DNA of 64,000 nt from IMGVR_UViG_3300033141_006329:124001-188000; one strand, 5' to 3'; shown: positions 27,351 to 42,990, counted from the first letter of the stretch. The notes: a model not told the origin generated them from the letters alone. Numbers and translations are program-made.

Positions 27351-27487
27351 AATTTCTCCTCAATAAATCTCACCTTTATTATTAATCAACTGTATCATTG
27401 TCTCTAATTTATATGGAAAATCTACCATATCCTTTCGTGCTAAACCGTCCCAAATTCTATTTTCTTCTTTCCTCCATTCTTTTTCGG

Positions 27488-27823: not shown

Positions 27824-28151
27824 AACGACATCCCTCCTCCATAAATTTCATCAATAAATCATTGTCATATATTTTCACATTCACTGTTTTATTAATACTT
27901 TTCCGCACTACATATTTAAAAAATTCGACACTCTGACTTATATTCGATTTGGTAATAACTGATTTTAAACACTCTCTAAATAATAATGAAGTGGTATAAA
28001 ATTTAATAACACCTCTTCCAGAACCCGAAAGGATCCAATAATAAGTACCTTGATATATACGTAGTTGATCCCGGCCATTTATCCTAAATGTATCCGTAGT
28101 ATAATAACTTTTGGGAGGACCTTCTTTTTCCTCATTCCAACCATCTATCAT
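27804..28151 (-). CDS. Array family protein (Y.TTD subfamily)
   Basis: Ends LLMKFMEEGCRYEQPVD. Confidence 0.65.
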   Translation of the reverse strand: MIDGWNEEKEGPPKSYYTTDTFRINGRDQLRIYQGTYYWILSGSGRGVIKFYTTSLLFRECLKSVITKSNISQSVEFFKYVVRKSINKTVNVKIYDNDLLMKFMEEGCRYEQPVD

Positions 28152-28461
28152 CTCCTACTCCTTTCACTAATAATATTTCTAATATATCGTCTTTTACTTC
28201 TATATATTTACAAGACTCATCATTCACAATAGGTTCAATTCCGCACTTATTAAAAAATTCAGATAATACTGTTTTTATAACAACTTTTATCTTAGGTGAA
28301 AATATTTTAAATACAAGAATACAATAATTATTGTGTGGAGTTACAACATTCCAACCATCATTATCTGGAAAGAGATTAAATTGTTTTACATCATCCTTAT
28401 AATATCGATCCGTTGTATTATAAGAACAAATAGTATTAGTAATAGATTTCCAACCTGTCAT
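28132..28461 (-). CDS. Array family protein (Y.TTD subfamily)
   Basis: GW......SYNTTD; ILEILLVKG tail. Confidence 0.65.
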   Translation of the reverse strand: MTGWKSITNTICSYNTTDRYYKDDVKQFNLFPDNDGWNVVTPHNNYCILVFKIFSPKIKVVIKTVLSEFFNKCGIEPIVNDESCKYIEVKDDILEILLVKGVGDDRWLE

Positions 28462-28781
28462 AATTCTTCTCCCTCATTTATAATTGTGATTAGTATATCT
28501 AGTTCCAATTTTATACTTGGATAACTATTCATAAACAGATATAGGCTGTCTAATCCATGTTTTTCAATATATTCTGATATAATTGTTTTTATCACTTCTC
28601 TAAAAGATAATAGACCAGTATAAAATTTAATATTGCCTAAGTTTATATGTTTTGATAACAACCAACGATATTCGGTAACATATAGGTATAGAAAATATTT
28701 TTCACCGATCCAATATTTATCACAAGCCGTGTATCTAAAAACTTTATCTGTTAATTCGAGCCAACCGTTGCTATAACTCAT
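28458..28781 (-). CDS. Array family protein
   Basis: Ends LDILITIINEGEEL. Confidence 0.65.
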   Translation of the reverse strand: MSYSNGWLELTDKVFRYTACDKYWIGEKYFLYLYVTEYRWLLSKHINLGNIKFYTGLLSFREVIKTIISEYIEKHGLDSLYLFMNSYPSIKLELDILITIINEGEEL

Positions 28782-29094
28782 ATCCTTTCTCCATCAAACT
28801 GTTTATATTCTCATCGATATTGATTTTCACAACAATTTTATGCAGATTTCTCATCATCATTGTTACACCTTTAAAATCATGAAAAATTTGATCCCCTATA
28901 GCATCACGTATTTCATACTTAAAATCTATGGATGATTTGGGAGGAATCTTGAACCAGAAAAGATTTATAATACAACCGCCTCCTCTAAATACTTCACGTA
29001 GGCTCACACACCAGTAAACATAATCAACCGCAGAGATAGATAGGGTGTGGTCGCCATAATTAAAGCGTATACCATTCTCACATTTTTTCCACAT
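28771..29094 (-). CDS. Array family protein
   Basis: MWKK..NG; paralogue of 30207..30554 (E.RD.IG.QI..DF). Confidence 0.65.
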   Translation of the reverse strand: MWKKCENGIRFNYGDHTLSISAVDYVYWCVSLREVFRGGGCIINLFWFKIPPKSSIDFKYEIRDAIGDQIFHDFKGVTMMMRNLHKIVVKINIDENINSLMEKGYEL

Positions 29095-29455
29095 ATTGCG
29101 CCCCTTCCTCTGACATATTATAAAATAAAGATTCCACACTCATGTCGATATTAATAATAATACCATTGGGATTATGTGTTTTTACAATATTTAACATTTT
29201 TGCACGGAATGTTTCGACTGATTTTGATTTCAAATTCTCATATATAATATCCAACAAAATAGGAATAAAATCATCATTTATATTTTTGAATATAATAGCA
29301 ACGCCACTATAATCTTCGTATCCAATAGCTATTCCCCAACCAGATCCTAATCCATACCTGATTGCTATCCAATATGCCCCTACTCTTGTGCCCATCCCAG
29401 TATGCCCATATTCTACAGACCAGCCTTCCCTTACATAACACGAAATATCATTCAT
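29078..29455 (-). CDS. Array family protein
   Basis: GWGIA.GY.D..G.AIIF shared with 30555..30917. Confidence 0.65.
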   Translation of the reverse strand: MNDISCYVREGWSVEYGHTGMGTRVGAYWIAIRYGLGSGWGIAIGYEDYSGVAIIFKNINDDFIPILLDIIYENLKSKSVETFRAKMLNIVKTHNPNGIIINIDMSVESLFYNMSEEGAQYVEKM

Positions 29456-29844
29456 GTCCTTCTTTCCCTCCCCAATAAAATGTTTCCAATGTATCCTCCA
29501 ATCTCACAGCAATAAAATCTTTATTATTTTTTATAAAGTTATAAAATTTATCATAATTTTTTTCAATAGCCTTCTCAACAATAAGTATTATTTCGCCAGG
29601 AAATTTATCATCTGAAATTTCAAAATCAATACCACCAATAAAAGTGTTACCATTGTCTAATTTCAAACGAAGGGATCCATCAGAATTACTTTCCTCCCAA
29701 AAATCTAAAAAAATACCACCCATCCGTCCACATGATGCAATAATTATTCCCCTCATAAACAAGATCATCACCCTCAGCAGGGCTCATCTGCGCTTTTCCT
29801 TCCTTTATATGAGCATAATATTCATACATCTCATTTGAGTCCAT
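29448..29844 (-). pseudogene. Array family gene apparently split by a frameshift in a T7 run
   Basis: Removing one base from 29707-29713 joins MDSNEMY...DGWY to LDFWEE...FYWGG in one 131-aa ORF. Confidence 0.45.
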
Positions 29845-30220
29845 AACAACCTCCCTCAAAAAATTCTTGTATAACCAAATCAAATACATCATATTTGTAA
29901 TCATAAGATGTATAAGGAGCAATTGTCTCATATAAATCCTCTACAGATCCAGACCTTAAAAATTCTGTCATTAGATCCAATAATATATACATGAAATCAT
30001 AATCATTTGTATTAAATACGATATATTTGCAACCAAAAGCGAATTCAGATCCTCGTATAGTCCTCTTAATATTTGATGTCATTATAGCAATCTTGGTGGG
30101 ACCAAAACTATTGACATCATACATGACCCCTATAGTATATGGATTTTTTTCATAAAAGAATCTTTCTCCATGATCCTTAACGGACCAACCAAAATCAATA
30201 TAATGTTTAACATTGTTCAT
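29831..30220 (-). CDS. Array family protein
   Basis: HYIDFGW; ends IQEFFEGGCYGLK. Confidence 0.65.
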   Translation of the reverse strand: MNNVKHYIDFGWSVKDHGERFFYEKNPYTIGVMYDVNSFGPTKIAIMTSNIKRTIRGSEFAFGCKYIVFNTNDYDFMYILLDLMTEFLRSGSVEDLYETIAPYTSYDYKYDVFDLVIQEFFEGGCYGLK

Positions 30221-30554
30221 ATGACCCTCCCTTCAATAACTCATTCAAACAATTATAGATATCAACATGTATAACCTCATTATAATTATCCTTCATAATA
30301 TCTAGAACACTTTCAAAATCCTGATAAATCTGTTTCCCTATAATATCTCGTAATTCGCATTGAAAAGAATTAGTCATATAAGAAGGCATTACAAATTTTA
30401 TATAAACCATCATCGAGCAACTACCCCTACTATACCAATGCCGATGTTCCAGATATACGCTCTCTTTATATCTATCTTTTTCATATGTTTGCGATATGAC
30501 TATCTCATCTTTATCATATGCGAACCACATGCCATTATAGAATTTTTCCCACAT
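30207..30554 (-). CDS. Array family protein
   Basis: Ends LNELLKGGSYEQC. Confidence 0.65.
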   Translation of the reverse strand: MWEKFYNGMWFAYDKDEIVISQTYEKDRYKESVYLEHRHWYSRGSCSMMVYIKFVMPSYMTNSFQCELRDIIGKQIYQDFESVLDIMKDNYNEVIHVDIYNCLNELLKGGSYEQC

Positions 30555-30917
30555 TTATCTTCCCCTCTCTAATATATCAAAAAGAAATTTATCTATATCA
30601 ATTTTTATATAAACAGTACTACCTATACAAAGATCATTTAGAACTATATCTATCAATGTGGATTCTAACTTATGTAGTGTATTTGTCTGTATATATTGTT
30701 CTACAATATCCAATAATAGAGGAATGAAATCAGTACCAACTTTCTCAAATATTATAGCAAGTCCTTTACAGTCTGTATATCCCATAGCAATTCCCCAGCC
30801 ACAACAATTAACTCCACATATCACAGCCACCCATATATCATCAATATTTTTATACATACCCACCCCATGCCTACTATCAAATATCCAATCATTTCTGCGA
30901 TATTGTTCTAGATTCAC
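30555..30917 (-). CDS. Array family protein
   Basis: Ends IDIDKFLFDILERGR. Confidence 0.65.
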   Translation of the reverse strand: MNLEQYRRNDWIFDSRHGVGMYKNIDDIWVAVICGVNCCGWGIAMGYTDCKGLAIIFEKVGTDFIPLLLDIVEQYIQTNTLHKLESTLIDIVLNDLCIGSTVYIKIDIDKFLFDILERGR

Positions 30918-31216
30918 AATTCACCTCCCTCAGCCATAAAATTCAAAATACTTTCATCGTCCATAAACAGACCACCACCATCATAATTCATAATATTGTT
31001 GATATTCAAATTCACATCATCTATAGCCTTGCGTAAAATATTTTCAAGTATATACATAAAATCATTGTGATATTCTTCATTCATAAGAAAAACAAAACGT
31101 ACTAAAAACGTAATACCATCAGATATATCCAAACCAGGATAATAACCAGTGAAACAATTCCTCAATCCTATATTTATCTGATATTTTTTATAAGGTGTAT
31201 ATATGTTACTAATCAT
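30914..31216 (-). CDS. Array family protein (YPG subfamily)
   Basis: YPG..I.DGI, M.EEYH..FM.IL and MDDESILN shared with next ORF. Confidence 0.7.
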   Translation of the reverse strand: MISNIYTPYKKYQINIGLRNCFTGYYPGLDISDGITFLVRFVFLMNEEYHNDFMYILENILRKAIDDVNLNINNIMNYDGGGLFMDDESILNFMAEGGEL

Positions 31217-31560
31217 TATAATTTCTCCCAATATCCTTCACTCATTATACAATTTAAAATACTTTCATCATCCATCCACATTTTACACAACTCTTTACTA
31301 TTCATCTCATGGATCAAAATCTTCATATTAATATCTATAGAATTAATAGCTTTTTGTAGAGTTGAATTGAGTATATCCATAAATTCAGGATGATATTCCT
31401 CATCCATATAGAAGACAGGAGTAGCTATAATTTCAATACCATCATCTATATACATTCCAGGATATTCAGGACCAGCACAATCTTTCATACATATGTGTAT
31501 ATTGTATTTGCCATATTTTTTACTTTCGTATTTTTCTATCTCATATTCGTACGATCTCAT
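31216..31560 (-). CDS. Array family protein (YPG subfamily)
   Basis: Tandem paralogue of 30914..31216. Confidence 0.7.
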   Translation of the reverse strand: MRSYEYEIEKYESKKYGKYNIHICMKDCAGPEYPGMYIDDGIEIIATPVFYMDEEYHPEFMDILNSTLQKAINSIDINMKILIHEMNSKELCKMWMDDESILNCIMSEGYWEKL

Positions 31561-32308
31561 TATAATCCTCCTTCTTAGGATACCAATTCCATATAGCTTC
31601 TTCTCCCGATCTCTCAGGCAGATATATACCATCCCTTTTATCCAGCCTAACATATTTACATAAAAAATCAACTACCCATCTTCTATCACCTCTCTTATTT
31701 ATTACCTTATTCCGTTCAACTCGCCATACGGCCCCCTCCACCTCATCAATGGCTCCATGGAATCCATACTTACCTAATCTTACCATTATATCAGCCACAG
31801 ATATAGCCCCACCAACATGAAGGATATGAGGAGTTATGAAATCGAATTGTCCTACTCTTGATTTTAAATCATTAAAAAGAATGCGCTTATAATTGGAAAA
31901 TAAATCAAATGTAACAAATGGTTCATGCGTTAGATTATATCTTGTACTATGAGCTTGTGCTAACCACTCTCCGCAAATCCTCTCATCATTATTAAGAAGC
32001 TCATCAAAGCGAGTTCTATTCCTCTCAACCCAATCAGCAAAAAATCGATGTTGTTTATAATCAGAGCTAACGGCTAAATAACCTGCTCTTATGAGAGGGT
32101 ATATTATTCCATCCTTTTTTGCTACACCGACATTTGTTCCGTCCAATTTTTCCAGGACAGTTATTAAATCATGTTCGTCTCTGGTCTTTTTTATAGCTAT
32201 ATTTCCTTGTCTCTCAGGACAATGATGATCACCGTATCCTGTTCTACTGTTGGGTAGATGCGGAATGTGACCATAACATTTAATTCCTAACGGTTTTTTA
32301 GGTCTCAT
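31541..32308 (-). CDS. ATP-dependent RNA ligase family protein
   Basis: Nucleotidyltransferase motifs EKLDGTN, ICGEW, FVTFD, EGAVWR, CKYVR. Confidence 0.8.
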   Translation of the reverse strand: MRPKKPLGIKCYGHIPHLPNSRTGYGDHHCPERQGNIAIKKTRDEHDLITVLEKLDGTNVGVAKKDGIIYPLIRAGYLAVSSDYKQHRFFADWVERNRTRFDELLNNDERICGEWLAQAHSTRYNLTHEPFVTFDLFSNYKRILFNDLKSRVGQFDFITPHILHVGGAISVADIMVRLGKYGFHGAIDEVEGAVWRVERNKVINKRGDRRWVVDFLCKYVRLDKRDGIYLPERSGEEAIWNWYPKKEDYNEIVRI

Positions 32309-32600
32309 ATTGTTTCCCTTCATACATAAAATCAATATCATGATATTCAAAGTAACTATATTTTTCCAATACATTTAAAAATCCACTCTTATCACCCACA
32401 TCAACCAGAGCCTCAATAAATTCTTCCGCCTCCTTAACATCAAAGTTTTTTAACATACCAATGTGTGTTTCGGTCGTTTCTCTCATATCATGATATATAA
32501 TATAACAACCAGGATGATTACATAAAATAACAGATAATTCCGAATTCTCCTGACACGATACCTTATCTTCCCAATGACTATTGATAATATTTGAGTTCAT
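32298..32600 (-). CDS. Array family protein (PGC...LKNFD subfamily)
   Basis: Ends LEKYSYFEYHDIDFMYEG. Confidence 0.7.
   Translation of the reverse strand: MNSNIINSHWEDKVSCQENSELSVILCNHPGCYIIYHDMRETTETHIGMLKNFDVKEAEEFIEALVDVGDKSGFLNVLEKYSYFEYHDIDFMYEGKQYET
32317..32366. repeat. 50-bp repeat, copy 1 of 3 (others 32610-32659, 33919-33968)
   Basis: CCTTCATACATAAAATCAATATCATGATATTCRAAGTAACTATATTTTTC. Confidence 0.9.
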
Positions 32601-33094
32601 AATTCAACTCCTTCATACATAAAATCAATATCATGATATTCGAAGTAACTATATTTTTCCAATATATATTGAAATCCTCCTCTACTGCACCCATTGATTA
32701 ATATCGTGATAAATTCTTCCGCTTCCTCAACATCAAAGTTTTTAAGTATACAAATATGTCTTTTCCCTGAGTATAAAATATAATGAGTCAATAACCAGCA
32801 ACCAGGATATTTGTTCAAGAAGACAGATAATTCTTTGTTCTCACAATACATTTTGTGAGTTTTCCAACTACCAAATCCTACCGCTTTCATAATAACTTCC
32901 CCCTCATTCATAATAATCTCAAATAACTTCTCATAATCAATATTCACAGAATGCATTTGATAATTAGTATTATTAAAATCATCTCGTTCTATAGTGAACA
33001 TCATCTTTACTGCACCACTACCGACTTTCCAATTTCGAATAACCATATCAAATCTCCCTTCAATAATATCATTAACTAATGTAACATTACACAA
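32597..33094 (-). CDS. Array family protein, apparent in-frame fusion of modules
   Basis: Internal tails DIIEGRFD and IIMNEGEVI precede a PGC...LKNFD module. Confidence 0.6.
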   Translation of the reverse strand: MCNVTLVNDIIEGRFDMVIRNWKVGSGAVKMMFTIERDDFNNTNYQMHSVNIDYEKLFEIIMNEGEVIMKAVGFGSWKTHKMYCENKELSVFLNKYPGCWLLTHYILYSGKRHICILKNFDVEEAEEFITILINGCSRGGFQYILEKYSYFEYHDIDFMYEGVEL

Positions 33095-33476
33095 GTTGAT
33101 ATCCCTTCCCCGAAAACCCTTCTAATAACTCATAGATTTTTATCCTTACTGTATGTGGTGATACAGGATGGTGATCATATATTAGGTTGTCAGTTTCGTA
33201 AGGTTTTAAAGTCTGTTCAGACATTAGAAATATAAGATGCTCGTTAAAAGCTTTGTATTTTTTATCCGATAACAATATATCAAATACCAATACCTTACGA
33301 GGGAGGGTATTATGATTAGTATAAAATCTAATTGTTGGAAATGTGTTATTAACCATCATCCAAATCTCATAATATAAATCCTGTAATACATAAGCACCTA
33401 TAGGGCAATATTTCCATGTTACACCATTAATATTAATACTCTTCTCACAGTTATCAGATCCCGATCGATTAATCAT
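33087..33476 (-). CDS. Array family protein
   Basis: INGVTW; ends IYELLEGFSGKGYQLV. Confidence 0.6.
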   Translation of the reverse strand: MINRSGSDNCEKSININGVTWKYCPIGAYVLQDLYYEIWMMVNNTFPTIRFYTNHNTLPRKVLVFDILLSDKKYKAFNEHLIFLMSEQTLKPYETDNLIYDHHPVSPHTVRIKIYELLEGFSGKGYQLV

Positions 33477-33909
33477 ACTGACATCCTCCCTTATAAAAAA
33501 TATCAAAAAGAATATGTAGAGAAGTATGTGCATTATATACTTTTCTGACCCCAGTAAAATCAAAACGATCTATAGGAAATCTATCAATATGCACTAATGC
33601 ACTTCGGCCTATTTCCAATATTTCCCCATGAAACTTGTCATTAATTGGTTTGAATAATATGGACAATATTGTAGTTCTTGGAGATGGCTCATCTTGATTA
33701 TAACCCCATTTTCTTGTAGGATTTACCTTAGAGATATCCAACATCGATATGAATATATACACTATATGTGGTCTGCATACAATACCTGCCTCTAATGTGT
33801 AACCATTGTATTTTCTCTGATATCTGCCAGAAGTTTTGTTCCATTTTATCTCACCCTCTTTTAAGGTCAGATAAGAATAATCAAATATATCAACATACAA
33901 ACTTTTCAT
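33469..33909 (-). CDS. Array family protein
   Basis: Ends ILFDIFYKGGCQYD. Confidence 0.6.
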   Translation of the reverse strand: MKSLYVDIFDYSYLTLKEGEIKWNKTSGRYQRKYNGYTLEAGIVCRPHIVYIFISMLDISKVNPTRKWGYNQDEPSPRTTILSILFKPINDKFHGEILEIGRSALVHIDRFPIDRFDFTGVRKVYNAHTSLHILFDIFYKGGCQYD

Positions 33910-34880
33910 AATTCAACTCCTTCATACATAAAATCAATATCATGATATTCAAAGTAACTATATTTTTCTAGTGTGCGCATGAATTGTTGTTCACCACCGA
34001 CTGCAAACAATGCTACAACGAAATCCTTTGCTGTTCTGATGTCAAAGTTTTTTAACACAGCAATATTTAAAAGAGATGTTGAACTTAGTCGCTTGGTATA
34101 TGTCAACTCAAAACAGCCAGGATATTTGTATAAATTAATAGATAATACGCGATGGTCGTAACTCGTGCAATTATCATACCACTCATCGCCAAATGCCGTG
34201 CCCCCGACACTCTTAAGCTTTTGAAGTTTACCTTCCTTAGTCAAAGATAATAATTTGGCAAATGTATTTACATCGTACCGACCATTAAACGTTTCTATAT
34301 TTTTTAATTTCGAAAGAGGTTCATAAGGAATATCTAATCTCTTATTGAAATCAACACTAAGATATTCTAAATTTTCTAACTTGCCTAGAGTATTCACAGA
34401 AGTTGCCGCACCACCATACAAATAAAGATGTTTTAACGACCTAAGATTTTTTAAGAAAGACATATCCATAATCTCACCGTTATTTAAAGATAAATATAGC
34501 GATTGTAATTGATTCAATTTCCCAATGTGCGACACACAACCAGAACAATTTGTAATTTTCAAAAAAGTCAGATTTGGAAGTAAAGATAAGAAAGGTTTAT
34601 CCCCTAAATCGAAATTTCTCATGGTGAGAGATTTTAAATTACTTAAAGTATTTATATTACTGAGATCCCATTTATCAATGCAATAATTTGCCCCTGATAT
34701 ACTCAATTCTGTCAGAGATTTAAAATATGGTAATATATTCGATAAATCTCTATTATTGCATAATCCAATGCTATCTATATGTTTCAAATGAATAGGTAGG
34801 ATGGTTCCATTTTTTGATAACCCGTTCTTTTTTCTTATCAACCTTCTTGCACTAAGTCCTTCAATGTTTAAACTCTTCAC
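33906..34880 (-). CDS. Leucine-rich repeat protein fused to array-family module
   Basis: LxxLxxLxL repeats, then YPGC...LKNFD...YHDIDFMYEGVEL. Confidence 0.8.
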   Translation of the reverse strand: MKSLNIEGLSARRLIRKKNGLSKNGTILPIHLKHIDSIGLCNNRDLSNILPYFKSLTELSISGANYCIDKWDLSNINTLSNLKSLTMRNFDLGDKPFLSLLPNLTFLKITNCSGCVSHIGKLNQLQSLYLSLNNGEIMDMSFLKNLRSLKHLYLYGGAATSVNTLGKLENLEYLSVDFNKRLDIPYEPLSKLKNIETFNGRYDVNTFAKLLSLTKEGKLQKLKSVGGTAFGDEWYDNCTSYDHRVLSINLYKYPGCFELTYTKRLSSTSLLNIAVLKNFDIRTAKDFVVALFAVGGEQQFMRTLEKYSYFEYHDIDFMYEGVEL

Positions 34881-35200
34881 AATTCAAATCCTCCCTCATT
34901 CATAATCTCTAATACGTCATATAGATCATAATGATCCCCGTTTTTCCTGTTCATGACATCAACCAAATTCTTTATGCTTCTTGTTTCCATAAATGAGGAT
35001 AATATTTTGGCTAATTCGTTGTCAAATCTTTTCGGCATATTGTAAAAATATAGTTTAAGAAATCTTCCACCCCTACTCAGATATACAAGTCTATGATTTG
35101 AAAATGTAAATGACCCAACCCATAAAGAACTTTTCCGATTATTACTTGATATCATATCAGAATGTTTTCCCACACTGCTTTCCTTCCAAATCAATTTCAT
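34877..35200 (-). CDS. Array family protein
   Basis: Ends LYDVLEIMNEGGFEL. Confidence 0.6.
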   Translation of the reverse strand: MKLIWKESSVGKHSDMISSNNRKSSLWVGSFTFSNHRLVYLSRGGRFLKLYFYNMPKRFDNELAKILSSFMETRSIKNLVDVMNRKNGDHYDLYDVLEIMNEGGFEL

Positions 35201-35565
35201 ACCCAGACTCCCTCAAAATAAAATTGTTGTACAAGATGTTCTACAATACATACAGATATTCTTGTATTTGTTTTAATATTTTTTATTAACTCAAGATTCT
35301 CCTCGATAATTATAAAAGGTTGTAGTATATCCATTATCTCACAGTAGAATATATCATTTCCAATATCAAATAAGAAGTATGCACTAGTACTACCATCATA
35401 ACTTATTCTTGCCCACCATGTTTCAGGGGATATTGTACTTAAAGATATGGTAGCATTTACATTAAATTTAGAATTGGTTCTATATGTAATATAACGTTTC
35501 CTGCTATTGTTATTACTATAAGATTTGATTGTCCATGTTATACCATTTCGTTTGAAACGATTCAT
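35197..35565 (-). CDS. Array family protein (first of array)
   Basis: NGITW...WW..I...FDIGND.F; ends QQFYFEGVWV. Confidence 0.6.
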   Translation of the reverse strand: MNRFKRNGITWTIKSYSNNNSRKRYITYRTNSKFNVNATISLSTISPETWWARISYDGSTSAYFLFDIGNDIFYCEIMDILQPFIIIEENLELIKNIKTNTRISVCIVEHLVQQFYFEGVWV

Positions 35566-35722
35566 AAGGTCTCCCAAAAAAATTAAAACTAATAATCCGT
35601 AATTTCTCATTAAAAGAAATTCCCCGCCACGATAATGACAGGGAAATAATATATTATCACATGATATGATATAAAAGGGCTCTACCCCTGAATAGAACCC
35701 TGATTATAAACAGATTGAAATA

Positions 35723-37516
35723 CTAACCAATCATTTCCATAAATGCATCCAGCGTCACTACAGGCACATTATATTTTATAGCCTTATCAATTTTACCCGA
35801 TGTAAAATCTGAGTCGGGTTTAACTAATAATGATAGAGTCTTAGTAACAGATTTAGAAGGTGACCATCCCCACACCTCTGCTAATTTGTGATAATGCGCT
35901 TTCTTTTTAGGAAATGTTCCTGTAAAACAAATTGTTTTTACTTCCATGTTTATTTCCTCCTTTTTGCGAATTTTTAATATGCTTTTTAACGCATCGATAT
36001 AATTCCCTAATATATTTAAACTCAGGAAAATTTCCCCTGAGCGTTCTATACCAATGCCCTCAATTTCCATTAATTCATCTGTTGACATTTTCCTCAGATC
36101 CGATAAAGAACGAGTTTTGAGGACAGATTCACTCATTCTTATCCCAACGCCCTCAATATTAAGAGAGGCGAGGATTTGCCATTCATATACTCCATTGTCT
36201 ATAACCTTATGTATTTCATCATATAGGTTTTGAGCCGAACTATTTGCAAATCCATCCAGCTCCAAAATATCTTCTTTAGTGAGATTAAAAATATCAATCA
36301 GACTGTTACAGTCCTTATTGTCTATTAATTTTTTCAGGGTGGGTTCTCCTAATCTCTCTATGCCTATACGAACAACAGAATCAGAGAGGCATTGTAATAG
36401 CTTACCAGTACACTCATCGTTACTACATCTCAATACAGGCTCGTCATATATGACTTTTTCACCACAAGCAGGACACATGTCCAGTTTTATCTCAATTCTA
36501 TTCTTGCCTGGAATAACTTTTTGGACATCAGGAATTATATCACCACATCGTTCGACTATGATCTCATCCCCTATATGTATATCGTTATCCAATACATACT
36601 TATAGTTATGAAGATTGACATTAGATACTATGACTCCACTAATCTCTACAGGCTCAACTTTGCCTACGGGGGTAATAACATTCTTTCCCGAACTCCAGAA
36701 TATATCTATCAACTTAGTTCTACCTGTAGGGTTTTTGAATTTTAGTGCCATCTGCCCTTTTGGATGATGAGAGGTTGCGCCTAAAGATTTAGAATATTCC
36801 TCATCATGCAATTTAATGACCAGACCATCTGTGGGATATTTATTCATGATAGCTTTTTGTATCAAAGTATTCCAATCTAATTTGGCCATGTGTTTATATT
36901 TCACAGATAGATTGACATGATTAAATGGAACAAAGGTTAATATTTTTCCTAAAGAATCATCTATATCATCTCTATTAAACAAACCAGCACACGCGTTCCT
37001 AGGAGTCTTATATGCCTCACCATTTTTTCTACAGATCTTATCTCGTATTCGATCAAAATCTTTAAGGGTCATAACAATCTCACCGACAACATATTTGGGA
37101 TTTTCATTGCCCTCAAATTTGATTATTGGTAATTTATCGGATATATTCACACCTATATATCCGTTACCTCTTGTCGATAAAACACCAGCATTAAACTCAC
37201 CAGTTGCTCCATCCAATTTTAATTGAATGTCAAATAATTCATTATCGGTCCTCGCTGTTTTTCCACACCATTCTAATATTTCATTTACAGAATATTTTTT
37301 GGCTAATGATAGCATAGGATTTTTATGTGTAATCTTACCTGCTGGTATGGATACAGGTGTATTAATCTCATTTAATAGAGGATGTTTTGGATCAATTGCT
37401 CGCAACTCTTCTACCAGTACATCATACTCTGAATCAGATATGTTCGAGTCATCATCCTCCCAATATAGGCGATCGTGATAGGTAATTAATCTTTCTAATT
37501 CTTCTTTTCTATTCAT
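35723..37516 (-). CDS. ligA: NAD-dependent DNA ligase
   Basis: ISDSEYD, H..PMLSL.K, KLDG, TRGNG..G, PRNA.AG, DGLVIK, ALKF, R.GDIIP, Zn finger, HhH and BRCT. Confidence 0.95.
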   Translation of the reverse strand: MNRKEELERLITYHDRLYWEDDDSNISDSEYDVLVEELRAIDPKHPLLNEINTPVSIPAGKITHKNPMLSLAKKYSVNEILEWCGKTARTDNELFDIQLKLDGATGEFNAGVLSTRGNGYIGVNISDKLPIIKFEGNENPKYVVGEIVMTLKDFDRIRDKICRKNGEAYKTPRNACAGLFNRDDIDDSLGKILTFVPFNHVNLSVKYKHMAKLDWNTLIQKAIMNKYPTDGLVIKLHDEEYSKSLGATSHHPKGQMALKFKNPTGRTKLIDIFWSSGKNVITPVGKVEPVEISGVIVSNVNLHNYKYVLDNDIHIGDEIIVERCGDIIPDVQKVIPGKNRIEIKLDMCPACGEKVIYDEPVLRCSNDECTGKLLQCLSDSVVRIGIERLGEPTLKKLIDNKDCNSLIDIFNLTKEDILELDGFANSSAQNLYDEIHKVIDNGVYEWQILASLNIEGVGIRMSESVLKTRSLSDLRKMSTDELMEIEGIGIERSGEIFLSLNILGNYIDALKSILKIRKKEEINMEVKTICFTGTFPKKKAHYHKLAEVWGWSPSKSVTKTLSLLVKPDSDFTSGKIDKAIKYNVPVVTLDAFMEMIG

Positions 37517-38251: not shown

Positions 38252-38782
38252 TTAAACATTCTGCTCCTCCTTTATTTTTTGAATATATGGTTTTAATTCC
38301 TCAAACGATACGGGTTTATAATCCCAAACATCTACTCCCACATTTATTACATTTTTTTGAATTTTAAACAGATCGTGTACATGGGCACATATAAAAATCT
38401 TAGATCTGTCAATACAACTCAAGGCAGGATCATGACACAATATTAAATCAATACCATCAATAGTAATTTCTAAACTTGTATGTACACTCCGAAACCCTAT
38501 ATTATTTACATATGAAAAAGGTTTAAGGGTATCATGATTTCCCAATATTAAAATTTTTATTCCTTTTAATTTTCTAATAACCGACTGATAATAATTCATA
38601 TGTTGGTTTGATCTGAGACTTAAATCACCAACAATATAAACAGTATCATCTTTTCCAACGACCTCATTATGATTTTTTATTAAAGCTTTGTCCATCTCTT
38701 CGCTGGTTTTGTATGGGCGATTACAATACAGAATTGCATTGTAATGACCATAGTGTGGATCCGCCGTAAAGTATATACTCAT
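38252..38782 (-). CDS. Calcineurin-like metallophosphoesterase
   Basis: DPHYGH, GD, GNHD, H and HVH motifs; INVGVD. Confidence 0.9.
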   Translation of the reverse strand: MSIYFTADPHYGHYNAILYCNRPYKTSEEMDKALIKNHNEVVGKDDTVYIVGDLSLRSNQHMNYYQSVIRKLKGIKILILGNHDTLKPFSYVNNIGFRSVHTSLEITIDGIDLILCHDPALSCIDRSKIFICAHVHDLFKIQKNVINVGVDVWDYKPVSFEELKPYIQKIKEEQNV

Positions 38783-38870
38783 TATCCTCTCTCCTTTCTT
38801 TAAAAATAAAATTAGCAAACAAGGTTCTTCATTCATAATTTAATATATATAGTTGAACCGCATATTAGGT

Positions 38871-38916: not shown

Positions 38917-40164
38917 ATGGGGTTTTGTCCTTTTTTATCATTGAGAAAAATAATACAAGTGAATGTTGCACCAAGGACAATTGGTGGTAGCATCACAAGA
39001 GATAATGGGAGTACGGTAACGTCGTGGATTCCAGGAACAGAAGAAGCTGTTTATAAACCCACATCTATTTCTGCTGCTATAGACACAGTAGATTACAATT
39101 CGGCTATAACATATGAACCTTGTCAAACTACAGCATGTCAATTATGGGATGATAAAAATAGTAGATGTGGCGCAAGAAGTTCAGATTTTATATACAATGG
39201 CAACACAGTTGAATCTGATGCAATAGTTAATATTATAAAAGCTGTAGTAGGTTCATACAGTCAAATAACTTCAGGTAATACATTGGTCCAAGAATTTCAA
39301 GATGTTGTAGGAAAAAGCACAGAGCAAGATAATTCAAGTAGTTTATATAAATATCTTCAGGATGTTATAGGAACACATGCTGAGAAAGATGGTATTAATA
39401 ATTCAACTAGTCTAATAAACTATCTACAGGATGTTGTAGGAAAAAATGCAGATAAGGATAATGATAAAAGTCTGTTATCATTCCTATCATCAATATTAGG
39501 GGCAAATACAGATAAGGATTCTGGTAATTCTTTTCTTAAACAGTTTACAGAAATAGTAGGATCAATAACAGACAAAGATGTAGCATCAGCTGATTGGGGA
39601 ATTTTAACCAGTCTCCTGAGTACATTCAGATTAACACATGTACCATCTGGAGAAGCACCCGCACCCTCAACACTGATAATGGAATTTTTAAATAAAACAG
39701 ATGCAGATAAGGTGGATTTTAGTTCATTGGGAGTTTCGGGTAGTATATATGGTCACGAGTTTATGATATATGAATCAAACCCGGATGATTTACCACCCAT
39801 ACTTAAAACGATACAGGAACATCCAGATTTTAAAACAGATGATATAGTAGATTTAGCAAATAGTAATTGTTCAGTGACTAATACTGTACCAGGGCATGAT
39901 AGTACTGATGAATGGGAATATACAATAGAAGCGACTGATGGTACAACAGATTTTGTAGTTGATGGTATAACTACGGATATGTATGTATTCGTTGAAAGCA
40001 TAAATAAAGTGGGAACCATAACTGAAGTTGCTCCGGATAGTGTTGCTACAAAATTAAAAATAAATATGGGCGTATATGATATTGATCCTTTACCAAACCT
40101 GTCATATTTCTTTATAGCAGGTAGGAAAAGAATATCATTTGCAGAATATGAATCCATGTTTTGA
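38917..40164 (+). CDS. Putative virion (baseplate/spike-associated) protein with internal repeats
   Basis: FCPF...C....CQLW motif; QDVVG...D...SL repeats; next to PAAR-like gene. Confidence 0.45.
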   Translation: MGFCPFLSLRKIIQVNVAPRTIGGSITRDNGSTVTSWIPGTEEAVYKPTSISAAIDTVDYNSAITYEPCQTTACQLWDDKNSRCGARSSDFIYNGNTVESDAIVNIIKAVVGSYSQITSGNTLVQEFQDVVGKSTEQDNSSSLYKYLQDVIGTHAEKDGINNSTSLINYLQDVVGKNADKDNDKSLLSFLSSILGANTDKDSGNSFLKQFTEIVGSITDKDVASADWGILTSLLSTFRLTHVPSGEAPAPSTLIMEFLNKTDADKVDFSSLGVSGSIYGHEFMIYESNPDDLPPILKTIQEHPDFKTDDIVDLANSNCSVTNTVPGHDSTDEWEYTIEATDGTTDFVVDGITTDMYVFVESINKVGTITEVAPDSVATKLKINMGVYDIDPLPNLSYFFIAGRKRISFAEYESMF

Positions 40165-40179: not shown

Positions 40180-40494
40180 ATGCCAGCAAATAGTAGATTG
40201 TTCGATCTATATGCAGGGGTAACACCATTACCTCCCCATCCACCAATCCCGCCTCCACCAATGGTCGGAGCAATAATAGCATTATGTTCAGGCGATCATA
40301 CAGTAGAATCTTTTAGTCAAGCCACTATCGGAAGTATGGGGTTGGACAACTGTATGATTCATGTGACATTCATAGTAGCAGGAAGCGGGACATCTAAAAC
40401 AAACGGGAAAGCAAAAGCTCGTGTTGGAGATCCTGTTGTCGGTGGTACTATAGGGGTAATGGTAACAGGCGCAGGGACAGAACAGACAGGATGA
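40180..40494 (+). CDS. PAAR-like spike tip protein
   Basis: MPANSRLFD...H; GS....NG...ARVGD.V. Confidence 0.7.
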   Translation: MPANSRLFDLYAGVTPLPPHPPIPPPPMVGAIIALCSGDHTVESFSQATIGSMGLDNCMIHVTFIVAGSGTSKTNGKAKARVGDPVVGGTIGVMVTGAGTEQTG

Positions 40495-40514
40495 TGATAA
40501 TCATCTCAGCCACA
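40494..40514. repeat. Left arm of long-range inverted repeat (partner 41392-41411)
   Basis: ATGATAATCATCTCAGCCACA pairs with TGTGGCTGAGGTATTATTAT. Confidence 0.6.
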
Positions 40515-40531
40515 CATATTAACAAACCAAT

Positions 40532-40569
40532 CTATCTTTAAAAATAATAAGCGTTTAGATAGTGCGCTT
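40532..40569. promoter_or_regulatory. Pseudoknot-like element upstream of RBS
   Basis: Interlocked pairings CTATCT/AGATAG and AAGCG(T)/(G)CGCTT. Confidence 0.45.
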
Positions 40570-40582
40570 TGAGAGGAAAGTT

Positions 40583-41383
40583 ATGAACATGTATCAAGAA
40601 AAATTTGTAGCAGTGGTTAAATGTAATGGAAAAATTATGAGAGAAAGGGATGGAGTTATATCCTTACCATTTGGATCAGAATATTCTATATTATTAAAAA
40701 ATCTTAATACAGTAAAAGCATCTGTAGATATATCTGTAGATAGTATGGATGTGGTTGATGGTCATTCTATTTTAATAGAACCTGAAAAATCTGTAGAGTT
40801 AGAAGGATTTATGAGAGGATCTGTTGCGAGGAATAGATTCAAATTTATAAATAAAACTAAGGAAATATCTGAATATAGGGGTGATAGAATAGATGATGGG
40901 TTAATACGAGTAGAGGTTACATTTGAGAAGAAAATAGAAAAAACAATTACAATATCAGATGGTACTTATTATACTTATTATCCTCCAGTTTATAATCATT
41001 TTACATGGACAGATGGTGGAAGTGGCAGTACTGGTGGTTTATTATCAGAAATGGATTTTTCGATCTCTAATACATGTAGTACCAAATTGGGATCAGGTCA
41101 TGTATCATGTAGTGCCGCCCAGAGTGACATGAGCGAGCCATTATCAGATGAGGGTATAACAGTTAAAGGATCTTCTTGTAATCAAGCATTCGCCCCGGCA
41201 TCAATAGGAATGTTGGAAGATAATTCCTCAGTTATAATATTACAGTTGAGTGGTTATAATGCTGAGGGTATTAAAGTAAAAAGTCCTATAACAGTTAACA
41301 CCAAGATAACATGTGAAACCTGCGGTAAGGGTTCCAAATCTAATTTAAAATTTTGTGGGAATTGTGGAACCTCACTAATATAG
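40583..41383 (+). CDS. Hypothetical protein, beta-rich N-domain and C-terminal zinc ribbon
   Basis: LPFGSEYSILLKN...DGLIRVE...EGITVKGS...C.TCG......FC.NCG; start from GAGAGG RBS. Confidence 0.75.
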   Translation: MNMYQEKFVAVVKCNGKIMRERDGVISLPFGSEYSILLKNLNTVKASVDISVDSMDVVDGHSILIEPEKSVELEGFMRGSVARNRFKFINKTKEISEYRGDRIDDGLIRVEVTFEKKIEKTITISDGTYYTYYPPVYNHFTWTDGGSGSTGGLLSEMDFSISNTCSTKLGSGHVSCSAAQSDMSEPLSDEGITVKGSSCNQAFAPASIGMLEDNSSVIILQLSGYNAEGIKVKSPITVNTKITCETCGKGSKSNLKFCGNCGTSLI

Positions 41384-41459: not shown

Positions 41460-41738
41460 ATGAAAGAACAAACCGTTAAACAATCTGAGGAATTAAAACA
41501 AGCAATAGAATCAAGGGATAAATTTTTACAAAGACATCCTAACCTAAAAATATTTCAAATGGAAATCGACAATGCTTTAGATAGGGTAAAGGACCCCTTA
41601 GAGAGATTGAGAATTCTATTCAAGTTAATAACTAAAAGAAATAATGAGCTACAGGAGGCAATAAACGAATACAAAATTGAATATACTTCATTACCTGAGG
41701 ATGTCAAGAAAGAAGTAGAACCTGTAACAATGTTGTGA
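41460..41738 (+). CDS. Hypothetical helical protein; stop codon supplied by IS end
   Basis: GGAGG RBS; TGA lies inside the IS right end. Confidence 0.6.
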   Translation: MKEQTVKQSEELKQAIESRDKFLQRHPNLKIFQMEIDNALDRVKDPLERLRILFKLITKRNNELQEAINEYKIEYTSLPEDVKKEVEPVTML

Positions 41739-41880
41739 ACTACCACAACTTCAAGTTGCAGCTTCCTGCTTCGCTGAAATCCACTTGACAAGGTTCTATA
41801 CAAGCAACCAAGTTAGAGGTTGATCTCTCAGCAGGCGTTGAACTGATGCGTCCCGCACCAGTTTGATTTAACCCTTTATA
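41735..41880 (-). ncRNA. Predicted omegaRNA/reRNA scaffold overlapping tnpB 3' end
   Basis: Position at right end as known for TnpB; 5' boundary approximate; guide would start at 41734 (AACAUUGUUACAGGUUCUAC). Confidence 0.55.
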
Positions 41881-42990
41881 GAGGATGTTCTTTGCAGCAT
41901 GAATGTCACGATCTTTTCTATAACCACAGTCGCAGACGAACATCCTATCTTTTAAGGTTAGTGATTTGTTAATTGCGTTACACGCAGGACATAATTTAGT
42001 GGAGGGATAGTATCTATCTACGAGCCTTAGAGTATGTGACTTTTTCTTTAAGTCACTCATTATTCCTCCAAGGATTGAATGTTGAACTGATTTTCCAAAC
42101 CACTTCTCGCTCCACCCTTTAATATTCTCGTCTTGCACACAGACAATTTTATACTTCTTTGTGATATGCGAAACAATTTTGTTTTTCGCATCTTTCTTCT
42201 GATTAGTTAACTTGTTGTATTTCTTAGCTATCTTCGAATTGAGTTTCCTATTATTCTTAGAGCCTTTCTTCTTGTGTTTCTTCTTTCGTTGAAGACGTTT
42301 TAGACTTTCTGGTATTGGGAATGAGAAGCTATGCTTCTCACCATTATCAAAAGTAAGAGAAGTCTTGATGCCGAAGTCAATGCCTATAGCTTCCTGTTCA
42401 AACACTTTCTCTTCCTTCGGTAAATAGCAAGTGACATGTAAGAAATAATCTTCGCATTTTCGTACGAGGTTCGCTGTTGCAATCTCTGCATTTGAAGGGA
42501 TTTGTTTCAAACCTATCAGTTTGAAACTACCCTTAAATCCTTGCAGCTTGAGATACTTGCCTCGCAGCTTATGCGTACTATTGAATTGCTTCAGATAAAT
42601 GCTATTCGATCTACTCTTGAACTTCAATCTACCTACTTTCTTACCTTTCTTCTTCTTAGCAGATAGTCCACAAATGTTGTGAAACAACCTCTCTCGAACG
42701 CCCTGCTTCATCTGAGAAGAAATCGCTTCAAGCGAACGAGTTTCGGCGATTTTATCTTTTCCGCAAATTGAGATCTCGTTCACTTTAGTATTAAAATTTA
42801 CCGGGTTATCTGTACCTAACATACAATTATACAACCACTTAGCTTCTAAGAATAAACGATCCAGGTACTCTCGTTTTTTCTTGGAGAGATGTGATTTATC
42901 AAACTTCAGCTCGTAAACTTTACAAATCAAAGACTTACGTCTTTCTCTTGTAGCCTTACCAGCCAGTTTGATTCTTTCGTTTTTTGTCAT
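41740..42990 (-). CDS. tnpB: TnpB RNA-guided endonuclease
   Basis: AIGIDFGIK (RuvC-I), YYPSTKLC.AC, C.CG...DRDIHAAKNI (RuvC-III). Confidence 0.93.
   Translation of the reverse strand: MTKNERIKLAGKATRERRKSLICKVYELKFDKSHLSKKKREYLDRLFLEAKWLYNCMLGTDNPVNFNTKVNEISICGKDKIAETRSLEAISSQMKQGVRERLFHNICGLSAKKKKGKKVGRLKFKSRSNSIYLKQFNSTHKLRGKYLKLQGFKGSFKLIGLKQIPSNAEIATANLVRKCEDYFLHVTCYLPKEEKVFEQEAIGIDFGIKTSLTFDNGEKHSFSFPIPESLKRLQRKKKHKKKGSKNNRKLNSKIAKKYNKLTNQKKDAKNKIVSHITKKYKIVCVQDENIKGWSEKWFGKSVQHSILGGIMSDLKKKSHTLRLVDRYYPSTKLCPACNAINKSLTLKDRMFVCDCGYRKDRDIHAAKNILYKGLNQTGAGRISSTPAERSTSNLVACIEPCQVDFSEAGSCNLKLW

What the first reader, a model, noticed from the sequence alone, without database searches (positions are those of the whole stretch)
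40532..40576. Pseudoknot-like leader abutting the RBS of the same gene
Seen: CTATCT(40532-37)/AGATAG(40557-62) interlocks with AAGCGT(40549-54)/GCGCTT(40564-69), ending just before GAGAGG. Read on the - strand (AAGCGCACTATCTAAACGCTT...AGATAG) the loops fit the usual H-type geometry of short L1 and long L3. Known: T4 gene 32 autoregulates through a leader pseudoknot bound by a zinc protein. Inference: an autoregulatory operator or an RNA/ssDNA recognition site for this zinc-ribbon protein; with the inverted repeat it suggests a self-contained protein plus structured nucleic acid module.
Basis: partly seen in the sequence, partly recalled or inferred. Interest (0 to 1): 0.65.

Follow-up and report, generated by a model that had tools for sequence, protein, structure and literature searches.

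The report
Conserved leader pseudoknot of jumbo-phage gene
The two interlocked stems in front of this phage gene are a real RNA pseudoknot, kept by compensating mutations in front of the same zinc-ribbon gene in well over a hundred large phages; it is an undescribed mRNA leader element that probably controls how much of that protein is made.

Summary
S1 is 40532-37/40557-62. S2 is 40549-54/40564-69 and includes one U.G. The Shine-Dalgarno GAGAGG lies at 40571-76 and the ATG at 40583.

In this one sequence the pattern is not beyond chance: about 124 such interlocks occur per strand in the window, against 129 in shuffles, and folding z-scores are nil.

Comparison changes the picture. The gene encodes a 266-aa Ig-like/zinc-ribbon protein with over 1500 homologues in jumbo phages, XacN1 among them. 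The same interlocked arrangement precedes it in about 130 distinct upstream regions. About 93% of cells are paired against 27-41% in slid controls, and 12 of 13 pairs show double changes.

G.U far outnumbers A.C, so the sense (mRNA) strand folds, not the minus strand.

The architecture is strict: S1 7 bp, S2 5-7 bp, a 2-nt UU linker, S1b flush with S2b, and a long A/U-rich L1. It ends 1-5 nt before the SD.

A gene-blind DNA pattern scan finds the full element only in front of this gene (68/68). Rfam has no match.

The most likely function is a translational operator or control element of the gene. Autoregulation by its own product is plausible but untested.

The parts
40527..40573 (+). Whole conserved leader element, as matched by covariance model R1
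   Evidence: cmsearch gives 40 bits, E 1.2e-7. It is the only match in the window; the next best scores 15 bits. It is also the only match in the 223-kb record that holds the window.
40532..40537 (+). S1a, 5' arm of stem 1 (CTATCT). In most relatives a 7th pair is added at the position of 40531; here that position is T.T with 40563.
   Evidence: Sequence. Stem 1 is 96-99% paired, with 6 of 7 pairs showing double changes.
40538..40548 (+). L1, 11-nt A/U-rich connector starting with the conserved TTAAA
   Evidence: TTAAA(C/G) is nearly invariant. L1 is at least 8 nt in 123 of 132 relatives, mode 13. It tolerates a 50-nt insertion in L149.
40549..40554 (+). S2a, 5' arm of stem 2 (AAGCGT)
   Evidence: The five inner pairs of stem 2 are about 97% paired with many double changes. 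This also holds in an alignment whose model did not include stem 2.
40555..40556 (+). L2, the 2-nt TT linker. With the next two bases it reads TTAG, a YUNR-like U-turn signature (named from my own knowledge).
   Evidence: TT in 54 of 69 sequences, and the second T in 66 of 69. L2 is 2 nt in 109 of 132.
40557..40562 (+). S1b, 3' arm of stem 1 (AGATAG)
40563..40563 (+). L3, 1 nt here. In 120 of 132 relatives this base pairs as the 7th pair of S1, so that S1b is flush with S2b.
40564..40569 (+). S2b, 3' arm of stem 2 (GCGCTT). G40564 pairs with T40554 as U.G.
40571..40576 (+). Shine-Dalgarno sequence GAGAGG, 1 nt after S2b and 6 nt before the ATG
   Evidence: Relatives carry AGGAG 3-5 nt after S2b, and the distance from the end of S2b to the start codon has a mode of 17-19 nt.
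40583..41383 (+). Gene of the 266-aa Ig-like beta-sandwich / zinc-ribbon protein (P0001), the only gene the element is found with

Best explanation
SHOWN. The 5' untranslated leader of the mRNA of the zinc-ribbon gene (40583-41383, + strand) folds into a small pseudoknot that selection maintains. Stem 2 is a 5-7 bp hairpin whose loop is 9 nt in the relatives and 8-9 nt here. After a UU turn, the remaining loop bases (seven in most relatives, six here) pair with a segment further upstream to form stem 1. The 3' strands of the two stems are contiguous, or 1 nt apart here. A long A/U-rich L1 leads back from the top of stem 1 to the foot of stem 2. The element ends 1-5 nt before the Shine-Dalgarno sequence, is single-copy, and occurs only with this gene family.

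INFERRED. The two helices stack on the continuous 3' strand, giving a compact fold with a conserved face: the CU/AG closing pairs of stem 1, the UUAAA start of L1, and the UU of L2. Sitting directly on the 5' side of the SD, it acts in cis on translation initiation of this gene. The most likely mode is as an operator for a protein that, once bound, keeps the 30S subunit off the adjacent SD. The gene's own product is the prime candidate, which would make this negative autoregulation as for T4 gene 32, S15 or ThrRS. This last step is a hypothesis, not a result.
For: Covariation: in 69 distinct upstream regions, 92.6% of cells are paired against 27-41% when partners are slid. Twelve of 13 pairs have changes on both sides, and 0 of 500 shuffles reach the observed values.

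An independent set from metagenome contigs gives 92.9% against 30-37%. There stem 2 was not part of the search model and still covaries.

An alignment-free parse of 137 unique regions finds at least 12 perfect pairs in 108 of them, against 0 of 70 shuffles. It records 48 different S1a and 65 different S2a sequences.

Strand: G.U against A.C is 20:4, 16:2 and 43:12.

Strict geometry: S1 is 7 bp in 114 of 132, L2 is 2 nt in 109, L3 is 0 in 120, and L1 is at least 8 nt in 123.

Exclusive association: there is one copy per locus, always just upstream of the gene. A gene-blind DNA pattern scan gave 70 hits with stem 2 in place. Of these, 68 have the homologue starting within 120 nt downstream and the other 2 sit at a contig end. 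The 10 hits without stem 2 have no such gene.

Upstream neighbours differ (63 clusters in 106 loci) and about half lie on the opposite strand, so the element belongs to this gene's own leader.

The family reaches cultured phages XacN1, Xoo-sp13, RAS14 and CM1, whose leaders keep the fold with entirely different stem sequences.

For a protein operator: loop and apex bases are conserved while the stems vary freely, the element lies next to the SD, and the product carries a conserved C4 zinc ribbon with a basic tail.
Against: No experiment or RNA-seq bears on it; no RNA run holds this sequence. The transcription start is unknown.

The protein shows no RNA-binding family or fold. It is a generic Ig-like sandwich (best Z 7.6), with no Pfam, PHROG or NCBIfam family beyond a sub-threshold zinc-ribbon match. 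Its pI is 5.5 and the family median is 7.

With L3 = 0 the classical coaxial H-type arrangement is sterically impossible. The alternative stacking proposed here is my geometric inference and was not modelled.

In a few loci a mobile endonuclease-like ORF sits behind its own copy of the element. The leader therefore works, or is at least tolerated, with an unrelated coding sequence. That fits a generic translation element as well as an operator.
Confidence: 0.4

Rival explanations
1. A protein-independent cis element. The compact 5' pseudoknot stabilises the mRNA against 5'-end-dependent decay, or insulates the SD from upstream pairing, or serves as a ribosome standby or enhancer site with its exposed A/U-rich L1. 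It would set a constitutive translation level rather than a feedback loop.
For: The element lies immediately 5' of the SD without pairing with it. L1 is A/U-rich. Inserted endonuclease-like ORFs in L015/L070, L088 and L108 carry their own copy of the element in front of their own SD and start, as if it were a portable expression leader. The protein shows no RNA-binding signature.
Against: A mere stabiliser or insulator would not need invariant loop bases, a fixed 2-nt linker and flush stems. It would also not be restricted to one gene out of some hundreds in each genome.
Confidence: 0.3
2. The two stems are not formed together. They are alternative hairpins of a conformational switch: the S1 hairpin versus the S2 hairpin.
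For: With L3 = 0 and L2 = 2 nt the classical H-type stacking cannot form (geometry). Each hairpin is moderately stable alone: S1 mean -6.5 and S2 mean -4.5 kcal/mol (window: -3.3 and -5.5).
Against: The stems share no nucleotides, so nothing but topology makes them exclusive. The strict contiguity of S1b and S2b, the fixed UU and the always long L1 are what a stacked loop-to-upstream-strand helix requires, and they are unexplained by a switch. Neither hairpin covers the SD or the start codon.
Confidence: 0.12
3. A small pseudoknot riboswitch that senses a metabolite or ion and tunes translation of the gene.
For: Its size and position resemble the small pseudoknot riboswitches next to an SD, such as preQ1-I and SAM-II (from my own knowledge). 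About a dozen positions are at least 90% conserved, several of them unpaired.
Against: There is no match to any Rfam family, even at E up to 10. The SD is not part of either stem. The gene lies beside tail genes in some relatives, has no metabolic link, and shows no plausible ligand.
Confidence: 0.07
4. The structure is formed by the - strand, as an antisense RNA or as single-stranded DNA, as the first reader suggested from the loop lengths.
For: Read on the - strand, the loops (0-1 nt, 2 nt, 8-20 nt) fit the classical H-type rule of a short L1 and a long L3.
Against: Wobble positions are G.U on the + strand and would be A.C mismatches on the - strand: 20:4, 16:2 and 43:12. The element keeps a fixed distance to the SD and start of a + strand gene while upstream neighbours vary in identity and strand.
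Confidence: 0.03
5. A chance pair of short complementary words in AT-rich DNA.
For: Such interlocks occur about 124 times per strand in this window, the same as in shuffles. MFE z-scores are nil.
Against: Covariation in about 130 independent homologous leaders, and exclusive linkage to the gene.
Confidence: 0.01

Closest known systems
T4/T2/RB69 gene 32 mRNA leader pseudoknot (autoregulatory operator; from my own knowledge of the literature)
   Same: It is a phage mRNA leader with a small H-type pseudoknot upstream of the RBS of the very gene it accompanies, and the product is a zinc-binding protein.
   Different: The gene 32 pseudoknot has the classical short L1 and long L3. It lies about 40 nt upstream of the RBS and nucleates cooperative binding of gp32 to an unstructured A/U-rich stretch. 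Here the knot ends 1-5 nt from the SD, has L3 = 0 and a long L1. The protein is an Ig-like sandwich plus zinc ribbon with no similarity to gp32. No binding has been shown.
E. coli rpsO (S15) and alpha-operon (S4) leader pseudoknots, and the thrS operator (from my own knowledge)
   Same: They are structured leader elements at or next to the SD. The gene's own product binds them and blocks or traps the 30S subunit.
   Different: Those elements include or overlap the SD or AUG (S15, S4) or mimic a tRNA anticodon arm (thrS). This one stops just short of the SD and mimics nothing recognisable. There is no sequence or model similarity (Rfam).
Small pseudoknot riboswitches (preQ1-I, preQ1-II, SAM-II, guanidine-III)
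   Same: They are elements of about 40 nt with two interlocked short helices, conserved loop bases and a position next to the SD.
   Different: They have the classical loop geometry with an A-rich L3 in the minor groove, and the SD is sequestered in a stem. No Rfam model matches, and this gene has no metabolic context.
YUNR U-turn loops of antisense RNAs and loop-loop 'kissing' helices (CopA/CopT, RNA I/RNA II; from my own knowledge)
   Same: The stem-2 loop begins with a conserved UU followed by AG (YUNR-like). It presents its remaining seven bases (six here) for a helix that would stack on the 3' strand of the stem.
   Different: Here the partner strand is in the same molecule, upstream, and tied back by L1. 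It is an intramolecular pseudoknot, not a bimolecular antisense contact.
T4 gene e / soc / 49 type RBS-sequestering hairpins (from my own knowledge)
   Same: In roughly a fifth of the relatives a segment 3-12 nt upstream of S1a (CAUGAU and variants) is complementary to the six bases ending in the start codon. That pairing would hide the AUG in longer transcripts.
   Different: This applies to only part of the family and is not clear in the window. The support is a modest excess over control registers, with few independent covariation events.

Membership tests
RNA pseudoknot (H-type topology) | Two helices whose strands alternate (S1a, S2a, S1b, S2b), each supported as a real helix | tested here: met
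   Both helices covary. About 93% of cells are paired against 27-41% in slid controls, and 12 of 13 pairs show double changes, in two alignments. The alignment-free parse agrees.
RNA pseudoknot (H-type topology) | Classical loop geometry: short L1 across the deep groove of S2, near-zero L2, and a longer L3 across the shallow groove of S1 | tested here: not met
   On the folded (+) strand L1 is 8-20 nt, L2 is 2 nt and L3 is 0 (1 nt in the window). The classical rule would fit only the - strand, which the G.U counts exclude.
RNA pseudoknot (H-type topology) | Both helices present in the same molecule at the same time | not testable with these tools
   No pseudoknot-capable folding or 3D modelling, and no probing data, were available. 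It is inferred from the fixed UU linker, the flush 3' strands and the long L1.
T4 gene 32-type autoregulatory operator | The pseudoknot lies in the leader of the regulator's own mRNA | tested here: met
   The element is always within about 20 nt of the start codon of this gene family and nowhere else.
T4 gene 32-type autoregulatory operator | The product is a gp32-like single-stranded nucleic-acid-binding protein | tested here: not met
   No Pfam, PHROG or NCBIfam match other than a weak zinc ribbon. The fold is an Ig-like sandwich.
T4 gene 32-type autoregulatory operator | A long unstructured A/U-rich tract between the pseudoknot and the RBS, for cooperative binding | tested here: not met
   Only 1-5 nt separate S2b from the SD.
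T4 gene 32-type autoregulatory operator | The product binds the leader and represses its own translation | not testable with these tools
   This needs EMSA, reporter assays or toeprinting.
Any Rfam 15 family (riboswitches, leaders, phage RNAs) | A match to the family covariance model at or near its gathering score | tested here: not met
   No match at gathering thresholds in the window. Nothing relevant appears at E up to 10 over 40400-40700, or at E up to 1 in six typical related loci.
Riboswitch (generic) | Ligand-dependent structure controlling the expression platform | not testable with these tools
   No ligand candidate. The SD is not within a stem.

The most novel reading that the evidence does not exclude
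This is a previously undescribed, self-contained ribonucleoprotein feedback module spread through a large clade of jumbo phages. In it, an Ig-like/zinc-ribbon protein of unknown function recognises a non-classical pseudoknot in its own leader and shuts off its own translation. The knot has a U-turn hairpin loop paired to an upstream strand, zero L3 and a long L1. Alternatively, the same knot is a new class of small riboswitch.
Probability: 0.3. Interest if true: 0.75.

Novelty: new member of a known kind. Interest (0 to 1): 0.62.

Why it matters
This is a clean RNA motif, strongly supported by covariation, that is absent from Rfam and from the papers I could search. It marks one gene family with over 1500 members, in phages from marine sediment to Xanthomonas and Stenotrophomonas phages. 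No function is known for that family.

The strict coupling of RNA and gene gives a direct handle on the protein: does it bind the knot? It also gives a compact, portable translation-control element of about 40 nt.

The loop arrangement (UU turn, flush 3' strands, long L1) is the mirror of the textbook H-type rule. A structure would therefore be informative for pseudoknot prediction rules.

Cultured hosts exist (XacN1, Xoo-sp13, RAS14, CM1), so the hypothesis can be tested at once.

Tried and rejected
1. Single-sequence statistics cannot support the feature. MFE z-scores are +0.2 to +1.0, and interlocked 6+6 stems number 124 against 129 in shuffles. Only comparison does.
2. Rfam gave nothing at gathering or permissive thresholds, in the window or in six related loci.
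3. DNA-level search of cultured phages found no near relative. Only tblastn found XacN1, CM1, RAS14 and Xoo-sp13.
4. Public sequencing runs yielded one DNA run with a small share of the words and no RNA run. Read laying was therefore not used, and the transcription start remains unknown.
5. The sigma-70 promoter and terminator scan around the gene gave 17 sites against 16.3 expected. One candidate would place its -10 box inside L1 and start transcription inside the knot. I rejected it because S1a covaries with S1b.
6. The promoter-like motif seen in relatives (TAGAACAWATATA / ATATATAGNNAGAACA) is not enriched in the window: 19 matches against 18.3 expected.
7. A generic search for an outer helix between the far leader and the start region did not beat shuffles (68 against 48). 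Only the register ending on the AUG shows an excess.
8. The - strand reading was rejected on the G.U against A.C counts.
9. Leader peptide: an ATG in CATGAT opens short frames in some relatives. The frame is not kept, and many relatives have CACGAT instead. Rejected.
10. The UUUAAAC in L1 resembles a -1 frameshift slippery site. However, TTAAGC variants are common, upstream neighbours differ and are often on the other strand, and the gene has its own SD and ATG. Rejected.
11. Protein function is left open. PDB Foldseek has no match at E <= 0.001. VIA-align gives only generic Ig-like folds with Z <= 7.6. PDB sequence profile matches touch only zinc ribbons of L32/L37e type, at E about 0.015 or weaker. 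The ESM Atlas returns only unnamed viral clusters.
12. The large profile search (search of protein representatives) was not used, because the word search already gave more than 1500 relatives.

Full report
**What is in the window**

- CTATCT at 40532-37 pairs with AGATAG at 40557-62.
- AAGCGT at 40549-54 pairs with GCGCTT at 40564-69. The last pair, T40554.G40564, is a wobble only on the + strand.
- The arms alternate (S1a, S2a, S1b, S2b).
- GAGAGG follows at 40571-76. The ATG of a 266-aa ORF is at 40583 and the ORF runs to 41383.

The window is 33% G+C phage DNA. It carries an NAD-dependent ligase, a phosphoesterase, a PAAR-like protein directly upstream (40180-40494) and a TnpB-like gene downstream. 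It lies in a 223-kb viral record.

**Is it more than chance in this one sequence? No**

- Two interlocked 6-bp stems (at most one G.U each, span 45 nt or less) occur at 124 distinct places on the + strand and 122 on the - strand of the window.
- Twelve dinucleotide shuffles give 110-154, mean 129.
- Nested folding energies of the region are no better than shuffles on either strand, with z from +0.2 to +1.0.
- Rfam finds nothing.

On this evidence alone the finding would be noise.

**The gene and its relatives**

- The protein has no Pfam, PHROG or NCBIfam family apart from a sub-threshold double zinc ribbon at its C-terminus.
- It has over 1500 relatives at 40-53% identity in metagenomic phage contigs.
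- It has 29-36% relatives in cultured jumbo phages XacN1, Xoo-sp13, RAS14 and CM1. In XacN1 and Xoo-sp13 the gene follows the tail sheath gene.
- The family alignment shows a conserved N-terminal domain, a variable low-complexity linker, a second conserved block and an invariant C4 zinc ribbon.
- An AlphaFold model (pLDDT 76) joins the two conserved blocks into one Ig-like beta-sandwich.
- The PDB gives only generic Ig-like matches, with Z of 7.6 or less. BFVD gives uncharacterised proteins of large eukaryotic DNA viruses.
- The protein is not basic: pI 5.5, family median 7. Only the zinc-ribbon tail is basic.
- Its function is unknown.

**The comparative test**

I fetched 80 loci from IMG/VR and 80 from metagenome contigs with the family alignment and cut out the DNA in front of each start codon. 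The same interlocked arrangement is there, with different letters. One example pairs CAGACT with AGTCTG around GAGGTC and GACCT. In XacN1, CCACCT pairs with AGGTGG around AGGCTC and GAGCCT.

| Measure | A2: 69 distinct sequences | A4: 61 distinct metagenome sequences |
|---|---|---|
| Cells forming a standard pair | 92.6% | 92.9% |
| Same, with 3' partners slid 1-3 columns | 27-41% | 30-37% |
| Pairs with changes on both sides | 12 of 13 | 12 of 13 |
| Covariation score (slid control) | 0.53 (about 0.08) | 0.585 (about 0.06-0.09) |
| Shuffles reaching the observed paired %, double-change counts and covariation score | 0 of 500 | 0 of 500 |

- A4 was gathered with a covariance model that contained stem 1 only. 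Stem 2 was therefore free to fail, and its five inner pairs are about 97% paired with up to five pair types per position.
- An alignment-free parse of 137 unique leaders finds at least 12 perfect pairs in 108 of them. None of 70 shuffled leaders reaches that.
- The parse records 48 different S1a and 65 different S2a sequences.

The structure is real.

**Which strand folds**

Wobble cells are G.U or U.G on the + strand and would be A.C on the - strand. The counts are 20 against 4 in A2, 16 against 2 in A4 and 43 against 12 in the parse, which treated both kinds alike. The window's own T40554.G40564 is one of them.

The sense strand, the mRNA, folds.

**Architecture** (132 leaders)

- S1 is 7 bp in 114. 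In the window it is 6 bp plus a T.T.
- S2 is 5-7 bp.
- L2 is 2 nt in 109, and reads TT in 54 of 69.
- L3 is 0 in 120, so S1b and S2b form one continuous 12-nt strand.
- L1 is at least 8 nt in 123, with a mode of 13. It begins with the nearly invariant TTAAA.
- In one locus (L149) L1 carries a 50-nt insertion with its own hairpin.
- The SD starts 3-5 nt after S2b (1 nt in the window). The distance from the end of S2b to the start codon has a mode of 17-19 nt.
- Conserved letters cluster at the top of S1 (the CU/AG closing pairs), the start of L1 and the UU. The lower part of S1 and all of S2 vary freely.

**How the fold can exist (inference)**

With L3 = 0 the classical stacking cannot form. 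In that stacking S2a continues into S1b, and L3 has to cross seven pairs of S1.

The data instead fit a hairpin (S2) with a 9-nt loop. After a UU turn the seven 3' loop bases stack on the 3' strand of the stem and pair with the upstream S1a. UUAG is a YUNR-type U-turn signature, which I name from my own knowledge. Two nucleotides can bridge the deep groove of 6-7 pairs, as L1 does in classical knots. The long L1 then has to run the length of about 12 stacked pairs, which explains why it is never short.

I could not model this in 3D.

The rival reading is two alternative hairpins. Alone, the S1 hairpin averages -6.5 and the S2 hairpin -4.5 kcal/mol. This reading is not excluded, but it leaves the fixed spacing unexplained.

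**Linkage to the gene**

- The model finds one copy in the window and one in the whole 223-kb record. The gene is single-copy too.
- In the related loci there is one copy each, always directly upstream of the gene.
- A gene-blind scan of IMG/VR used a DNA pattern made only of the commonest S1 letters and the two loop motifs. It returned 80 loci. Seventy of them have a complementary S2 in place. Sixty-eight of those have the homologue starting within 120 nt downstream, and the other two end at the contig edge. The ten hits without S2 have no such gene.
- Upstream neighbours fall into 63 clusters in 106 loci, and about half lie on the other strand.

The element therefore belongs to this gene's own leader, not to an operon junction.

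**Function**

Nothing here shows function.

The position is that of known translational operators: flush against the 5' side of the SD without pairing with it. The loop bases are conserved and the element is restricted to one gene family. Together these make a cis-acting control element of translation initiation the best reading. A bound protein is the likeliest effector, and the gene's own product is the first candidate.

Against the own-product idea, the protein shows no RNA-binding signature.

A protein-independent role, as a 5' stabiliser, standby site or enhancer, is nearly as likely. It is favoured by the natural 'transplants'. In L015/L070, L088 and L108, an inserted endonuclease-like ORF of about 215-250 aa sits behind its own copy of the knot and SD, followed by a second copy in front of the zinc-ribbon gene.

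A riboswitch is possible but has no support beyond size and position.

**Other leader features**

- Forty related loci carry one exact copy of a promoter-like motif (ATATATAGNNAGAACA); where I checked its position it lies about 30 nt upstream of S1a. The window lacks it.
- In about a fifth of the family, a segment 3-12 nt upstream of S1a is perfectly complementary to the six bases ending in the start codon. Variants covary: CATGAT with ATCATG, CATGGT with ACCATG, and others. The count is 26 of 132, against 3-8 in other registers. In the window this pairing is only 4-5 of 6.

**Novelty**

I found no Rfam family and no paper in the searchable library describing the element. The jumbo-phage overview and the XacN1 paper do not mention the protein.

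I file it as a new member of a known kind, a leader pseudoknot that controls translation, with an unusual loop arrangement.

Noticed in passing
L015:1634-1679 and 2439-2486; L070:1654-1699 and 2439-2485; L088:294-339 and about 1050-1100; L108:670-717 and 1438-1485: Some relatives carry two copies of the pseudoknot. The first, behind the promoter-like motif, precedes an inserted ORF of about 215-250 aa. That ORF has an N-terminal Cys/His motif and weak DUF559/Vsr-like and Ros/MucR matches, so it may be a free-standing homing endonuclease. The second copy precedes the zinc-ribbon gene. The ORFs of L015/L070 and L088 are related (36-40% identity); that of L108 is not.
   Followed up: partly
Related loci, e.g. 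L006:2392-2407, L064:2403-2418 (40 loci): The composite motif ATATATAGNNAGAACA occurs exactly once per locus; in the loci I checked it lies about 30 nt upstream of S1a (L124 has it far upstream). It is probably the promoter of this gene in that clade. It is absent from the window, where TAGAACAWATATA is not enriched.
   Followed up: partly
Related loci, 3-12 nt upstream of S1a and the start codon; window 40515-40520 versus 40580-40585: An outer helix is possible. CAUGAU(A) and its variants pair with the six or seven bases ending in the AUG, with covarying variants. It is a perfect 6 bp in 26 of 132 leaders against 3-8 in control registers. In the window, CATATT against GTTATG pairs at only 5 of 6 positions. 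It could hide the start codon in long transcripts.
   Followed up: partly
L149:1362-1453: L1 of the pseudoknot carries an insertion of about 50 nt with its own hairpin, while both stems are kept. This shows that L1 is an external, length-tolerant connector.
   Followed up: no
window 40583-41383 (protein P0001, model m78ae624c08ef): The two conserved blocks (residues 1-115 and 186-230) form one split Ig-like beta-sandwich around a disordered, low-complexity linker that is His/Tyr-rich in relatives. The best structural look-alikes are uncharacterised proteins of large eukaryotic DNA viruses: mimivirus-like viruses, marseillevirus, pithovirus, iridovirus ICP-18/ISKNV ORF098, nudivirus, baculovirus P22.2 and WSSV wsv390 (BFVD E down to 1.6e-11). 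Some phage relatives carry a SHOCT domain in place of the zinc ribbon.
   Followed up: partly
window 41740-42990 (-) and 41460-41738 (+): A TnpB-like gene (OrfB_IS605 plus Cas12f1-like TNB; phrog_506, E 1.8e-56) has no tnpA next to it. Its stop abuts the stop of a 92-aa ORF on the other strand. The region where a guide (omega) RNA and the right end of the element would be expected therefore overlaps that ORF. Inverted repeats lie at 41533-47/41691-705 and 41611-26/41674-89.
   Followed up: no
window 38917-40164 (+) and 40180-40494 (+): A 415-aa protein with several tandem copies of a motif of about 22-24 aa (..L..F/YLQDVVGK..DKD..) is followed by a PAAR-like protein (Pfam E 6e-4, phrog_281). 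This looks like a tail-tip or spike module directly upstream of the zinc-ribbon gene. In XacN1 and Xoo-sp13 the gene instead follows the tail sheath gene.
   Followed up: no
window 40534-40541 and relatives (S1a/L1 junction): The conserved ACUUUAA(G) at the S1a/L1 junction is identical to the core of the T7 gene 10 'epsilon' translational enhancer, as it stands in pET leaders. That is recalled from memory and is not a tool result. Here its first bases are paired in S1. It is a lead only.
   Followed up: no
window 17385-35610 (-): There is a long run of some 45 small ORFs (about 100-160 aa) on the - strand, packed end to end, next to an NAD-dependent DNA ligase (35723-37516) and a phosphoesterase (38252-38836). 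This is typical of an early or accessory region of a jumbo phage and was not examined.
   Followed up: no
G000 (whole record): IMG/VR labels the 223-kb record a 'provirus' at 71% completeness. The protein database lists the same protein on a contig of 306 kb. The record is probably an incomplete free jumbo-phage genome rather than a prophage.
   Followed up: no
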